Below are positions 40,363 through 52,600 of a DNA stretch of 64,000 nt, one piece after another (the first letter of the stretch is position 1; each line of letters begins with the position of its first letter). Source of the stretch: Macrostomum lignano (lineage: Eukaryota); the NCBI GenBank assembly GCA_002269645.1, contig NIVC01003708.1:1-64000 (forward strand), written 5' to 3'. The translations under genes were made by a program, and so were the position numbers. A model generated the notes under the pieces. It ran no database searches. It was given only the letters and a program-made list of their open reading frames with translations, and was not told the origin of the DNA.

Positions 40363-41105
40363 ATGGAAAGTCAAAGCAGCATCGGCTGTGCTGTCTGCTG
40401 TCTTCTGCTTCTGCAACCTGTCGTTTGTCGATCCTACGTGTACCACTACATTGGCTGCTACGTTGACAACCCCGATAAGGCCAGAGATTTGACTGGTCTG
40501 CGGGGCATATTGAAACTCGGCAGCTTGGATGTTGGTGCCAAGCAAGGAGTCATTCGTAGCCACCATATGACAGCTGAGTTTTGTAGCAACGCTTGCTCGC
40601 TCGGTGGATTTGCCTACTTCGGACTGCAGTACAGTTCGGAGTGCTTTTGCGGTGCCAGCTACGGGTCGTATGGTGCAGCCAGTTCAGGCTGCGACATGCT
40701 TTGCTCCGGCAGTTCCAAGCAGTACTGCGGTGGAGCTCTTAGAAATTCGATGTTCGCTATTCAGTACCAGGGTGTGTTGGATCGATTTGTATAGGGTTGT
40801 GTCTGTTTATCTAGCTCGTATAACCGTGCAACTTGAAAAACGTCCCGCATTCCCCAGATCCATGCCTCGGATATCGCCAGTCGCCAAGGGCCTACCTGGA
40901 GACGTCAACCATAAATTTCCGGCCCTCACGACAAACCTATTGGACTGCCAATGTCAACAATGTGATCCAGTGCTCGTTCAGCTGCAACTCCAGCTGTCAG
41001 GCCTTCATCTACTCGCAGCTCAAGAGCGTCTGTTACCTGCTAAGCTTTGCTCTCGTGCCCAGAGAGATCGGCACTATTGACGGTGTGTTTCTTATTAGAA
41101 AGTAG
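40363..41105 (+). CDS. Secreted WSC-domain + PAN/Apple-like protein, paralog 1; exons 40363-40771, 40858-41105
   Basis: Signal peptide, then WSC motifs YIGCY.D, MT.E.C...C, FGLQY..ECFCG, C...C.G....CGG...NS. A phase-1 intron precedes CSFSCNSSCQAFIYS...CYLLSFALVP. Confidence 0.88.
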
Positions 41106-41404
41106 AAATAACTATGCACAATGCCTTATAACTATGAGAGTTATAAGCCCAAGAAATGCTATATATATCAAATATACATGTATATATATGATAAAAAAGA
41201 ACATACGCGTTGACTAAAACACTCTTAAAACGGGCCCACCGGCCGGTTGTTTTTATCTGCGCGGTACATGTTTTTTTCGAAGCAACATACTGCTGCCTAC
41301 CTCTAATTACAATCAATAATTGTTGATACATGTTTGGTGACAAATTTAGCTTATTTATAGCGTAAATACCATATATTACTACAACGAAGAGTTGTAGGAT
41401 ATAC

Positions 41405-49600: not shown

Positions 49601-52600
49601 GTGGCTGTGGCCCCAGAAATCTACTTCAGGTACCTCAGACGTATCGCAACACTTGCTTACTCTTCATATGGGCCTGTTTTACAACTACCCCCTATTTAAA
49701 ATCAGGCCTCCATTCACCCAACACCCGAGTCACTTACACTTTCGGATGAGCCGGATCGGCCAGCACCTGTCCCAGCTCGAGGAGGGCGTCAGCAACCAGC
49801 GGGTGGTTGAGGCCGTACCATCTGTGATAGAGCTTGAAAGCCTTGTCCAACAGGCGGGCCGCTTGGTCATAGTTGCCCATTGTTTTGCTGCAAAGTTTTT
49901 TGCAAGGTATGGTAGACAATAAAGAAACGGAAATTAACACAAAAGCGAGATGAATCTCAAAAGTACACATATGCTTGACTTAGTTGAGCATCATACAAAG
50001 CTATCGTAGGCGTCGATCCTCTCACCTGAGCTGTCCAAACTTGTGCGCCGCCGCCGCTCTTAGCGTTACGCTGCCGCTGCTGCGCCTGCAGAATCGAACT
50101 CGCTCAAAGTAGCGCCTCGCCTCCTCGACCTGACCGCGCCGGAAGGCCAGCTCGCCGAATCGAACCAACAGTCGGCCGTAGTTAGTTGCCACCCGTTCCG
50201 TTAGACTGGCGGCTTGCTCCGTCTCTCCAGGAGTTTCTTTCTTAGAACTGGCCTCGGCTTCGGCGTCCAGCTCGGACTCGCTCTGCCGCTCGGAGTCGCA
50301 CAGCGCCATGGCTAAACGGAGATTCTCCTCGGCTCTGGTGTAATAATCCCAGCTGGCTTGCTCATCTCCCATGGTGGAGTAGAGCCGGCCGATTCGGATG
50401 AGCAGCTGGGAGACCTGCTCAAGGCCAGCTGCAGATGAGGACATAACCTGCATTTGATTAAAAACAATTGCAAAATTTAATTAACCAAAAACGATTTTTA
50501 AATGACAGTGCGTTAATTAATTTTTCGTCGCATTGTGCAGCCTAAATTACTCGTTTTAATTATTTAATCGTTCCTGGTTAACAACCCATATTGGCTGACT
50601 AATGAAAACAATCAAAGCCTATTCAACATTTCAATTTGCTTAATGAATGCAGGCAGTCTATAAAATGAGTTGGAATCAGCCAGAAAGAAACAGCTCAGCT
50701 AAAAATTGTGCCAGCATGACGTCAAAGAAGATCTGCGCCTTCAACTTGAGTCTGCTTCTGCTTAGCCTAGCTGGGGCTACGCGTGTTGCTAAACTAGTCT
50801 ACATCGGTTGCTATGCTGACAGTCACTATCAGCAAGATCTAGACGGCCTTGTTGGCATTGAAGAGCTAGGCAAGTACATGGTGCACTCTACGTACGGATA
50901 CGCCATGGCAAACTCGGGAATGACAGTCGAGCTGTGCGGCAGCATCTGCTCTCTGGGCGGATTCCCGTACTGCGGACTGCAGCAAGGCGGCTGCTACTGC
51001 GGCACCAGCTATGGACGCCATGGTAGACGCAACGAGTCCGAGTGCAGTTGGGCTTGCGAGGGCAATCCGTTGCAAATTTGCGGCGCCCACGGCATCAACT
51101 CTGTCTACTACGTAAACTATGCCAGTGAGTACCTGGTTACTGCTGCACAGTTCAGCCCAGACCTTTTACAGCATATTATTACATAATTATGATAAAATAC
51201 CCCATTTGGTCTCTTGGCTTGGTTCTTTTCTCGGGTTTCTCTTTGCTAGTAGATTAATATTAGCATTCGAATTCGAATTCGTTCATTTCCTCACTCTGTA
51301 CGTGTTTCGACTATGTATAATTTACTTTGTTCAGATCGATGCAGCCGATTTCGTTCGTCAACGAGGTCAATCCTGTTCACCTCATCGAACTACAACCGGC
51401 CGACCTACTGGATTGCTACTGCTGGAAGCCTGATCAACTGTGCTCACAGATGCAACTCCAGTTGTCAGGGCTTTATCTACTCACCGCGACATGATCTGTG
51501 CCGTCTGCTGAGCTTTGCTCTTGTGCCGAGTGAAGTTTCTATCGAGGAGGGCCTGTTCTTTACCAGAGTGTGAATATTGATTTAATTTAGAACAGCGACT
51601 TAAGCATTGCAACTTGGTCATGTTTGAACTGTTTTTTCAAGTAAAGATCCATTTAAAAACTTGTTTTCATAGACGGCATTCCACCACAATTTTGTAATGT
51701 CTAATTGTACGAGACTTCAGGGGCGTAGCCAGCATCTATAGCTAAGGGCGCCATTTTATTTGACGGGCCCTACTCCATTCGTGAAGGCATCTGTGCAGCT
51801 GCGCCAGCATATGGGTGTTGCTATACTGCAAAGGGCGCTTTGCATACACTTTGCCTTCTTGCCCCCATGGCTTTATTCTTTTAGAGGCAGGGGGTTGTGT
51901 GCACCCTGGCGCACTTTAAGCGACATTGTCACACAACCGGCAAGACGCATTACTGCCCATTCCGCCGACCCCCGCCTCCTGAGCAGACACAAGCGCGCGG
52001 ATGCGTTAAGCAATGCACAACGGCCATAACTTTATTTATCGTCAGGTATGTACTCGTTACTGTGCTTTGGGGGTTGGCCCTCAAGGGCGTTAATTGCATT
52101 GCTCGAGCCGACCCAAGCATAGATTTCAACTAGATCCAAATTAATGTGACGAAAATTACCGATTGCTGCAGTGTCAGACAAGCCTTGAGTATAGCAACCG
52201 CGTGTTCGTTCTTCTTCAACATGGTGAGCAGCTTAGCCAGGCGGATTCCAAATAGAATGGCCGTCTCAGTTCCGGCTTCGTCGATGCTCTGGGTAGATTT
52301 GTCCGATGTGACGCTTCTTAGATCGTCAATGATGCTCATCTCAGAGGCAGTTACGTCCTGTTCAGGGATTGGTATGAGTTGACTAATACAGTGAAACAGT
52401 TTTGCTGCTGAGTAATACTTTATTCGAAGATTTTCGCTGTGAGTGCAGATTTCAGGTTACAACCGTCAATACTGTAAAGCGTTATGCGTGCAAAAGAAGT
52501 CTTTAGTGATAAAGAAGCTTTATGGAAAAATAATTATTATTACACTTAGTGGAAACATTTAAGAGCGTCGGATACTCAAGCAGTTATCATTTTTAGATAG

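What the first reader, a model, noticed from the sequence alone, without database searches (positions are those of the whole stretch)
40363..51573. Cluster of three secreted WSC + PAN/Apple-like proteins with a family-specific WSC insertion
All three are on +, ~215-225 aa, with signal peptide, one WSC domain, an identically placed phase-1 intron and an ~80-aa module C-x3-CNSSCQ[AG]FIYS-x5-C-x-LLSFALVP-x6-G-x-F-x2-R. All share a long loop DL.GL.GI..LG between GCY.D and M..E.C, longer than I recall for typical WSC. The rest is highly diverged while the cysteines and the LLSFALVP end are invariant. Both domain types are associated with glycan or protein binding (established). Inference: a lineage-specific soluble lectin-like family (mucus, innate recognition or adhesion); I know of no description of it.
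Basis: partly seen in the sequence, partly recalled or inferred. Interest (0 to 1): 0.7.

Follow-up and report, generated by a model that had tools for sequence, protein, structure and literature searches.

The report
Flatworm secreted WSC plus PAN/Apple proteins
Three neighbouring two-exon genes of the flatworm Macrostomum lignano encode small secreted proteins that join a WSC domain carrying an extra beta-hairpin to a divergent PAN/Apple domain; they belong to a larger uncharacterised gene family seen so far only in this species, and it is real but fairly ordinary.

Summary
Three intact paralogs lie on the + strand (40363-41105, 44005-45083, 50647/50716-51573). Each has two exons split by a GT-AG phase-1 intron at the same position.

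- **Exon 1:** a hydrophobic leader plus a WSC domain (Pfam E 1e-12 to 1e-14).
- **Exon 2:** a PAN/Apple domain. The window copies score below Pfam's cutoff. Paralogs pass it, and the family profile matches solved apple domains.
- **The "long loop":** the first-to-second cysteine spacing is 36-42 residues, against a mode of 24 in 662 other WSC units. AlphaFold predicts extra beta-strands there with high confidence.

The organism is Macrostomum lignano. All 20-plus relatives with both domains came from that species. They are often in tandem arrays, share the intron, and are labelled only "WSC domain-containing" or "hypothetical". RNA-based GenBank models show that several paralogs are expressed and spliced this way. 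Expression of these three genes was not shown.

Function is untested. My best reading is soluble extracellular glycan- or protein-binding proteins. A seminal-fluid role is a plausible lead, because many WSC proteins of this worm are prostate-limited, but it was not confirmed. This is a lineage-expanded new arrangement of known domains, of modest interest.

The parts
40363..40771 (+). g1 exon 1: start codon, hydrophobic leader (about residues 1-22) and WSC domain; ends 1 base into codon 137
   Evidence: ORF and translation; GTGTGT donor, phase 1; Pfam WSC 54.6 bits
40492..40566 (+). g1 WSC insertion (residues 44-68), between the conserved R-D-L motif and the M-T-x-E-x-C helix
   Evidence: Alignments; Cys1-Cys2 spacing 42 against a mode of 24
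40772..40857 (+). g1 intron, 86 nt, GT..AG, phase 1
   Evidence: An independent gene model (UniRef A0A1I8HRT3 = P0014) joins the same two exons at the same junction
40858..41105 (+). g1 exon 2: linker with one extra cysteine, divergent PAN/Apple domain, stop codon
   Evidence: family profile matches apple domains; paralogs pass the Pfam PAN_1 cutoff
44005..44434 (+). g2 exon 1: leader and WSC domain (Pfam match residues 35-131)
   Evidence: AlphaFold model pLDDT above 90 across the domain
44146..44226 (+). g2 WSC insertion (residues 48-74), predicted as beta-strands 53-56, 59-64 and 67-71
   Evidence: DSSP on the model; block pLDDT 91-93
44435..44838 (+). g2 intron, 404 nt, GTGAGA..TTTCAG, phase 1
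44839..45083 (+). g2 exon 2: PAN/Apple domain and stop; an AATAAA overlaps the stop codon
   Evidence: Pfam PAN_1 at 12-15 bits, E 0.02-0.2, below the cutoff; model shows strands 149-151, 156-159, 168-172, helix 176-182, strands 189-193, 198-202, 217-221
50716..51124 (+). g3 exon 1 from the likely start Met (MTSKKICAF...). In-frame ATGs at 50647 and 50665 lie at or upstream of a TATAAA at about 50659
   Evidence: Pfam WSC 48.3 bits
50842..50919 (+). g3 WSC insertion (residues 43-68 counted from Met 50716)
51125..51334 (+). g3 intron, 210 nt, GTGAGT..GTTCAG, phase 1
51335..51573 (+). g3 exon 2: PAN/Apple domain and stop

Best explanation
These are three old tandem duplicates of a gene family that has expanded in Macrostomum lignano. 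Each gene makes a small soluble secreted protein of about 21 kDa after leader removal, built from two disulfide-locked modules of the same general fold.

- **Exon 1** encodes a WSC domain with all eight canonical cysteines. In its first loop it carries an extra segment of about 13-18 residues, predicted to form a beta-hairpin.
- **Exon 2** encodes a divergent PAN/Apple domain with the four core cysteines, plus one extra, probably unpaired, cysteine in the linker.
- The phase-1 intron between the domains is the typical signature of an extracellular module added by exon shuffling.

Inferred mechanism: the protein is released from a gland or epithelium and binds an extracellular ligand, either a glycan or a protein, through surfaces of the two modules. 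The diverged surface residues give each paralog a different specificity. The odd cysteine may allow covalent dimers or attachment to a matrix.

Shown: gene structure, domain identity, family membership, species, purifying selection, and expression and splicing of paralogs. Inferred: secretion, ligand binding and tissue.
For: - **Gene models and splice sites:**
- **WSC domain:** Pfam E 1e-12 to 1e-14. Profile match to the Kremen1 WSC domain at E 1e-9. Foldseek hits to Kremen1, a glyoxal oxidase WSC domain and yeast Wsc1 at E about 1e-5.
- **PAN domain:** 10 of 12 family C-terminal modules hit PAN_1. Paralogs score above the 21.4-bit cutoff: P0055 21.6, P0074 22.4, P0164 30.6, P0174 29.9, and P0004 units 29.8 and 33.4. 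The family profile hits only PAN/Apple chains in the PDB: TgMIC4 8.6e-5, SML-2 1.1e-4, HGF N domain 1.3e-3.
- **Structure:** AlphaFold with a 17-sequence family alignment gives pLDDT 85.8 and pTM 0.77, with the insertion as confident strands.
- **Insertion is unusual:**
- **Published fold relationship:** WSC has the PAN/Apple fold but lacks the L1/L5 hairpins of canonical PAN domains (PMC9024836; PMC5014086).
- **Species and family:**
- **Shared intron:** the same phase-1 intron occurs in distant paralogs whose GenBank models are RNA-seq based.
- **Tandem arrays elsewhere:**
- **Selection:** synonymous sites are saturated (pS 0.67-0.83) while pN is 0.37-0.39, all cysteines are kept, and the conserved motif has synonymous differences.
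- **Soluble, secreted form:** hydrophobic leader, no transmembrane-grade segment, 13-14 cysteines in the mature protein.
Against: - There is no direct evidence that g1-g3 themselves are transcribed. Their exact products are not in the 15-billion-protein collection. Only g1 has an independent, partial gene model.
- The window copies fall below Pfam's PAN_1 cutoff.
- I had no signal-peptide predictor, so secretion is judged from hydropathy and the cysteine-rich extracellular domain types.
- WSC and PAN domains bind very different ligands in different proteins, so 'lectin-like' is an analogy and not a result.
- The absence of the family from other species is weakly tested. Only the 150 best of 8610 HMMER hits were visible, and multi-WSC fungal proteins crowd that list.
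Confidence: 0.6

Rival explanations
1. [quoted passage not shown] Their divergence would then reflect sexual selection.
For: - In the in situ screen of Weber et al. 2018, roughly 25-30 of 76 prostate-limited transcripts have WSC-type best hits (PMC5977470, Table S1).
- Knock-down of the WSC-containing Mlig-pro46 lowers sperm competitive ability (PMC6953679).
- RNA815_80.4, which has two WSC domains, is needed for a prostate secretion epitope (PMC4490696).
- The window proteins are small, secreted, tandemly duplicated and strongly diverged outside the cysteine scaffold.
Against: - None of the 36 RNAi primers for 18 prostate transcripts occurs in the window with 3 or fewer mismatches.
- None of the Mlig gene identifiers of the family paralogs I could name appears among the identifiers listed for those 18 transcripts.
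- The one prostate WSC sequence I could read (RNA815_80.4) has a short first loop and two WSC domains, so it belongs to a different subfamily.
- dN/dS of about 0.2-0.3, with saturated dS, shows constraint and no sign of positive selection.
Confidence: 0.2
2. The proteins are epidermal, mucus, rhabdite or gut secretions that act as pattern-recognition or mucus-organising lectins.
For: - The architecture is a soluble protein with two binding modules.
- Apple domains of TgMIC4 and SML-2, the closest solved sequence matches, are described as lectins or crystallised with galactose analogues.
- Fungal WSC domains are linked to cell-wall glycans (PMC9024836).
Against: There are no expression data. 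No paper linking WSC or PAN proteins to mucus or immunity in Macrostomum turned up. The adhesion literature for this species, as far as searched, names other proteins.
Confidence: 0.15
3. One or more of the three copies are untranscribed relics in a repeat-rich region that happen to keep open reading frames.
For: - The cluster is interrupted by a degraded non-LTR retrotransposon (41.4-43.5 kb) and two satellites (45157-45682 and 46947-47916).
- The exact products are not in public protein sets.
- No canonical poly(A) signal lies within 400 nt of g1 or g3.
Against: - All three keep intact ORFs, canonical splice sites, every structural cysteine and the conserved motif, even though synonymous sites are saturated. 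This is not expected without selection.
- g1 has an independent gene model with the same junction.
- GenBank's annotation deliberately dropped transcripts overlapping repeats, which could explain the absence (PMC5730564).
Confidence: 0.05

Closest known systems
WSC domains of Kremen1 (PDB 5FWS) and yeast Wsc1 (PDB 7PZ2), Pfam PF01822
   Same: Exon 1 has the eight-cysteine WSC scaffold and the C-G-[GA] motif. It passes the Pfam cutoff, and the model superposes on these structures.
   Different: Kremen is Kringle-WSC-CUB plus a membrane anchor. Wsc1 is a membrane sensor with a Ser/Thr-rich stalk. Here the WSC domain sits in a small soluble protein and carries a 13-18 residue beta-strand insertion in the first loop, which about 99% of the other WSC units examined lack.
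PAN/Apple domains (Pfam PF00024): HGF N domain, plasminogen PAp, Toxoplasma MIC4 apple domains, Sarcocystis SML-2
   Same: Exon 2 has the core C-x3-C-x3-6-C-x10-11-C pattern and a predicted sheet-plus-helix fold. The family profile hits these chains and nothing else in the PDB.
   Different: The domain is very divergent, and the window copies score below Pfam's cutoff. It lacks the N-to-C terminal disulfide of apple domains and has an odd cysteine in the linker instead. It is a single copy fused to WSC, not an apple-domain array or a PAN-kringle chain.
Prostate-limited WSC-domain transcripts of Macrostomum lignano (Mlig-pro series; Weber et al. 2018, Patlar et al. 2019)
   Same: Same species. 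They are small secreted WSC proteins, often encoded by several near-identical or tandem genes.
   Different: No sequence link was found to the 18 primer-defined transcripts. The one readable example has two short-loop WSC domains. The tissue of the present family is unknown.
Human WSCD1/WSCD2
   Same: They contain WSC domains and are cited as the best human match of some Macrostomum prostate transcripts.
   Different: From general knowledge, those are membrane proteins with WSC domains plus a sulfotransferase-type domain. No such region exists in these 215-aa proteins.

Membership tests
WSC domain (Pfam PF01822) | Score above Pfam's gathering cutoff (27.8 bits) | tested here: met
   54.6, 49.8 and 48.3 bits for g1, g2 and g3
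WSC domain (Pfam PF01822) | Eight conserved cysteines (four disulfides) and the C-G-G motif | tested here: met
   In g2: C38, C80, C84, C100, C102, C117, C121, C129. All are invariant across 17 family members. The motif reads CGG, CGA, CGA in g1-g3. Feature definition from PMC9024836.
WSC domain (Pfam PF01822) | WSC three-dimensional fold | tested here: met
   Predicted model (pLDDT 85.8) matches Kremen1, a glyoxal oxidase WSC domain and Wsc1 at Foldseek E 5e-6 to 2e-5, probability 1.00. This is a prediction, not a solved structure.
WSC domain (Pfam PF01822) | Carbohydrate binding | not testable with these tools
   Needs glycan arrays or binding assays
PAN/Apple domain (Pfam PF00024 PAN_1) | Score above Pfam's gathering cutoff (21.4 bits) | tested here: inconclusive
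   The window copies score 12-15 bits or are undetected. Clear paralogs of the same alignment pass: 21.6, 22.4, 29.8, 29.9, 30.6 and 33.4 bits.
PAN/Apple domain (Pfam PF00024 PAN_1) | Core of four cysteines: a helix C-x3-C paired with two later cysteines | tested here: met
   C179, C183, C187 and C199 in g2. Three are invariant and one nearly invariant in the family. The pairing itself is not verified.
PAN/Apple domain (Pfam PF00024 PAN_1) | Sequence-profile similarity to solved PAN/Apple domains | tested here: met
   The family C-terminal profile gives TgMIC4 8.6e-5, SML-2 1.1e-4 and HGF N domain 1.3e-3. All 23 chains listed are PAN/Apple proteins.
PAN/Apple domain (Pfam PF00024 PAN_1) | Antiparallel sheet packed on one helix | tested here: inconclusive
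   The model has strands 149-151, 156-159, 168-172, 189-193, 198-202, 217-221 and helix 176-182, with pLDDT above 90. PAN/Apple chains appear in Foldseek at E 0.03-1, but I could not tell which of the two domains they aligned to.
Kremen family | Kringle + WSC + CUB ectodomain with a membrane anchor | tested here: not met
   Only WSC (and weak PAN) was found. There is no Kringle, CUB or transmembrane segment.
Fungal Wsc-type cell-wall sensors | WSC + Ser/Thr-rich stalk + transmembrane helix + cytoplasmic tail | tested here: not met
   The proteins end right after the PAN domain. No hydrophobic segment of transmembrane grade follows the leader.
Macrostomum prostate-limited seminal-fluid candidates (Mlig-pro1-76) | Expression limited to prostate gland cells by in situ hybridisation | not testable with these tools
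   No expression data are reachable. The primers of 18 of the 76 transcripts are absent from the window.

The most novel reading that the evidence does not exclude
The family is a Macrostomum-specific set of gland-secreted, possibly seminal-fluid, binding proteins. Its WSC domain has acquired, or retained, the first-loop beta-hairpin that otherwise separates canonical PAN/Apple domains from WSC domains. That would make it a natural structural intermediate between the two domain families, fused to a true PAN domain, with paralogs diversifying in ligand specificity.
Probability: 0.2. Interest if true: 0.5.

Novelty: new variant of a known kind. Interest (0 to 1): 0.3.

Why it matters
The practical value is to flatworm biology. 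The work defines a multigene family of secreted proteins in a laboratory model that has RNAi and transgenesis, gives correct two-exon gene models, and flags merged or partial models in public databases. If the family proves to be gland or seminal-fluid lectins, it would add candidates to the study of sexual conflict in hermaphrodites. For protein evolution, a WSC domain with a PAN-type first-loop hairpin placed next to a true PAN domain is a neat case for how the two related cysteine-rich folds diverged. None of this overturns current understanding.

Tried and rejected
1. **Word-indexed protein search with g2 alone** found nothing. With the C-terminal alignment it returned only P0014. This index misses the family; the exhaustive HMMER scan found it.
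2. **AlphaFold with only the three window sequences** was useless (pLDDT 30). The 17-sequence family alignment was needed.
3. **A single C-terminal module against PDB sequences** gave no hit. The family profile was needed.
4. **Internal duplication:** profile-profile comparison of the family's WSC half against its PAN half showed no similarity (probability 0.2%). The two halves are not a recent internal duplication. Any kinship is at fold level only.
5. **Link to published prostate transcripts:** the primers are not in the window, the gene identifiers are not shared, and a full-text search for paralog identifiers was empty. RNA815_80.4 belongs to another WSC subfamily.
6. **Linked GPCR:** a receptor gene fused upstream of paralog P0133/P0162 shows no similarity to the receptor-like ORFs downstream of g3.
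7. **dN/dS as a test of positive selection:** synonymous sites are saturated, so only constraint can be stated.
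Full report
**What is in the sequence**

Between 40.3 and 51.6 kb, the + strand carries three pairs of open reading frames. Reading all frames and the junction sequences shows three two-exon genes:

| Gene | Exon 1 | Exon 2 | Intron |
|---|---|---|---|
| g1 | 40363-40771 | 40858-41105 | 86 nt, GTGTGT..CCCCAG |
| g2 | 44005-44434 | 44839-45083 | 404 nt, GTGAGA..TTTCAG |
| g3 | 50647 or 50716-51124 | 51335-51573 | 210 nt, GTGAGT..GTTCAG |

Every exon 1 ends one base into a codon, so the introns are phase 1, and the introns fall in the same alignment column.

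For g3 the start is probably Met 50716 (MTSKKICAF...). A TATAAA lies at about 50659, and only this start places the hydrophobic leader at the N-terminus.

The products are 218, 224 and 215 aa and 43-50% identical. tblastn finds exactly these three copies in the window, at E 1e-17 to 1e-40 between copies.

**Domain identity**

- **WSC.** Pfam finds WSC (PF01822) in all three at 48-55 bits, against a cutoff of 27.8. A profile of the three matches the WSC domain of Kremen1 at E 1e-9.
- **PAN/Apple.** The C-terminal module is weak on its own, with PAN_1 at 12-15 bits against a cutoff of 21.4. It is clearly homologous to paralog modules that pass the cutoff at 21.6, 22.4, 29.8, 29.9, 30.6 and 33.4 bits. 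A profile of twelve family modules hits only PAN/Apple chains in the PDB: Toxoplasma MIC4 apple domains 8.6e-5, Sarcocystis SML-2 1.1e-4, HGF N domain 1.3e-3.

**The WSC insertion**

- The g2 WSC match spans 97 residues for 82 model positions.
- Across 24 family units the first-to-second cysteine spacing is 36-42. In 662 other WSC units among the search hits the mode is 24, and 97% lie within 20-32. Only a handful of genuine cases reach 33-46.
- With a 17-sequence family alignment, AlphaFold gives a confident model (pLDDT 85.8, pTM 0.77). In it the inserted segment forms strands 53-56, 59-64 and 67-71, at pLDDT above 90.
- Foldseek puts Kremen1, a fungal glyoxal oxidase WSC domain and yeast Wsc1 first (E about 1e-5), followed by PAN/Apple structures.
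- Published structures state that WSC has the PAN/Apple fold but lacks the beta-hairpin insertions in loops L1 and L5 of canonical PAN domains (PMC9024836; PMC5014086).

My inference is that this family's WSC domain carries a hairpin-like addition in L1, where canonical PAN domains have one. I could not inspect coordinates, so the equivalence is not shown.

Profile-profile comparison of the two halves of the protein shows no sequence similarity. The protein is therefore not a recent internal duplication.

**Organism and family**

An exhaustive HMMER scan of 1.84 billion representative proteins found 8610 WSC-containing hits. Among the 150 listed, every protein covering both domains is from Macrostomum lignano.

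- P0014 (UniRef A0A1I8HRT3) equals g1 residues 72-218, apart from D137A at the split codon. It is therefore an independent gene model using the same junction.
- Further paralog groups are P0051, P0055, P0057, P0074, P0082, P0105, P0133 and P0163-P0166. P0001 (2673 aa) and P0004 (1074 aa) are merged models of tandem arrays with seven and five units.
- A family-specific C-terminal HMM hit only Macrostomum proteins among the 162 retrieved sequences then in hand.
- Non-Macrostomum hits of the last search have WSC only and short first loops.

All members are labelled only 'WSC domain-containing protein' or 'hypothetical protein'. Literature searches found no description of a WSC-PAN family.

Caveat: only the best 150 hits were visible. 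Weaker two-domain relatives in other animals cannot be excluded.

**Gene structure and expression of relatives**

- Loci of paralogs from the GenBank assembly GCA_002269645.1 show the same phase-1 intron between the domains. This holds in P0133 (341 nt), in P0159 (109 nt) and in P0159's upstream neighbour (233 nt).
- Tandem pairs or triples occur in L003-L005.
- The GenBank annotation is built from RNA-seq assemblies (PMC5730564), so those paralogs are expressed and spliced in this way.
- For g1-g3 I found no RNA-based model, and their exact products are not in the collection. That annotation dropped transcripts overlapping repeats, and this cluster is full of them.

**Selection**

Between the three copies, synonymous sites are saturated (pS 0.67-0.83) while pN is 0.37-0.39, which gives dN/dS of roughly 0.2-0.3. 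All cysteines are kept. The invariant CNSSCQ...LLSFALVP stretch has synonymous differences, so it is held by selection on the protein and not by gene conversion. These are old, constrained duplicates, not relics.

The mature proteins have 13, 13 and 14 cysteines: eight in WSC, four in the PAN core, and one in the linker that has no obvious partner. They have no transmembrane-grade segment, and all three share an N-S-S sequon in the PAN helix.

**Function**

Nothing here measures function. The architecture argues for soluble extracellular binding proteins: a leader peptide, two rigid disulfide-rich modules of types known for glycan and protein binding, and variable surfaces on a fixed scaffold.

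The only functional context in this species comes from three published findings:

- A large share of prostate-limited transcripts carry WSC domains (PMC5977470).
- Knock-down of one of them lowers sperm competitive ability (PMC6953679).
- Another is needed for a prostate secretion epitope (PMC4490696).

I could not link the present family to those transcripts. The primers are absent from the window, the gene identifiers are not shared, and the one readable sequence belongs to a different WSC subfamily. The seminal-fluid idea is therefore a lead at about 0.2, alongside a mucus or immune lectin role at about 0.15.

**Verdict**

The family is real, seen only in M. lignano so far, and uncharacterised. 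It is a new arrangement and variant of well-known domains in a repeat-rich flatworm genome. It is useful for annotation and a modest curiosity for domain evolution, but it is not a surprising finding.

Noticed in passing
window 41379-43528 (- strand): A degraded, GC-rich (56%) non-LTR retrotransposon fragment lies between g1 and g2. Its reading frames are frameshifted, and one ORF matches the start of the RVT_1 reverse transcriptase model (E 7e-5). Peptides that by eye resemble this element's ORFs are fused into merged public gene models of other clusters of the family (P0001, P0155).
   Followed up: partly
window 45157-45682 and 46947-47916: Two satellites lie between g2 and g3: a 17-bp unit in 31 copies starting about 75 nt after the g2 stop, and a 28-bp unit in 35 copies. 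Both produce long spurious ORFs on the + strand.
   Followed up: partly
window 49734-50453 (- strand): Exons of a tetratricopeptide-repeat gene (TPR_12, weak nephrocystin-3-type TPR) sit between g2 and g3 on the opposite strand. It is unrelated to the family.
   Followed up: partly
window 63365-63931 and 59259-59603 (- strand): ORFs with a P-loop NTPase motif (weak, sub-cutoff matches to AAA_16 and the nephrocystin-3 N-terminal domain). This may be another gene of the NACHT/TPR type, interrupted by a 4-bp microsatellite and 30-bp satellites.
   Followed up: no
window 1-9830: A 51-bp satellite in about 194 copies at 96% match fills the first 9.8 kb, with constant GC skew.
   Followed up: no
window 34132-37041 (+ strand): An equilibrative nucleoside transporter gene (Nucleoside_tran, E 1.6e-35 for the last exon), with a 28-bp satellite (35640-36444) in an intron.
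   Followed up: partly
window 60967-62738 (- strand): Gag and aspartyl-protease ORFs of an LTR retrotransposon.
   Followed up: partly
window 53029-54709 (+ strand): Two ORFs with several hydrophobic segments that look like a seven-helix receptor but have no Pfam match. They show no similarity to the receptor gene next to paralog P0133.
   Followed up: partly
P0001, P0004, P0147, P0155, P0162 (public M. lignano protein models): Several UniProt or MetaClust entries are merged models. They fuse up to seven family genes, transposon pieces, a kinase or a receptor into one 'protein'. Internal signal peptides give this away.
   Followed up: partly
window 40771/40858 (g1 split codon): The window encodes Asp at residue 137, whereas both public g1-like models (P0014, P0151) have Ala. 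P0151 also has M130V. This suggests allelic or homeologous copies in this recently duplicated genome.
   Followed up: partly
L005 9223-11079: The P0051-type paralog appears to have an extra intron of about 650 nt inside the WSC first-loop region. The window genes and P0133/P0159 lack it.
   Followed up: no
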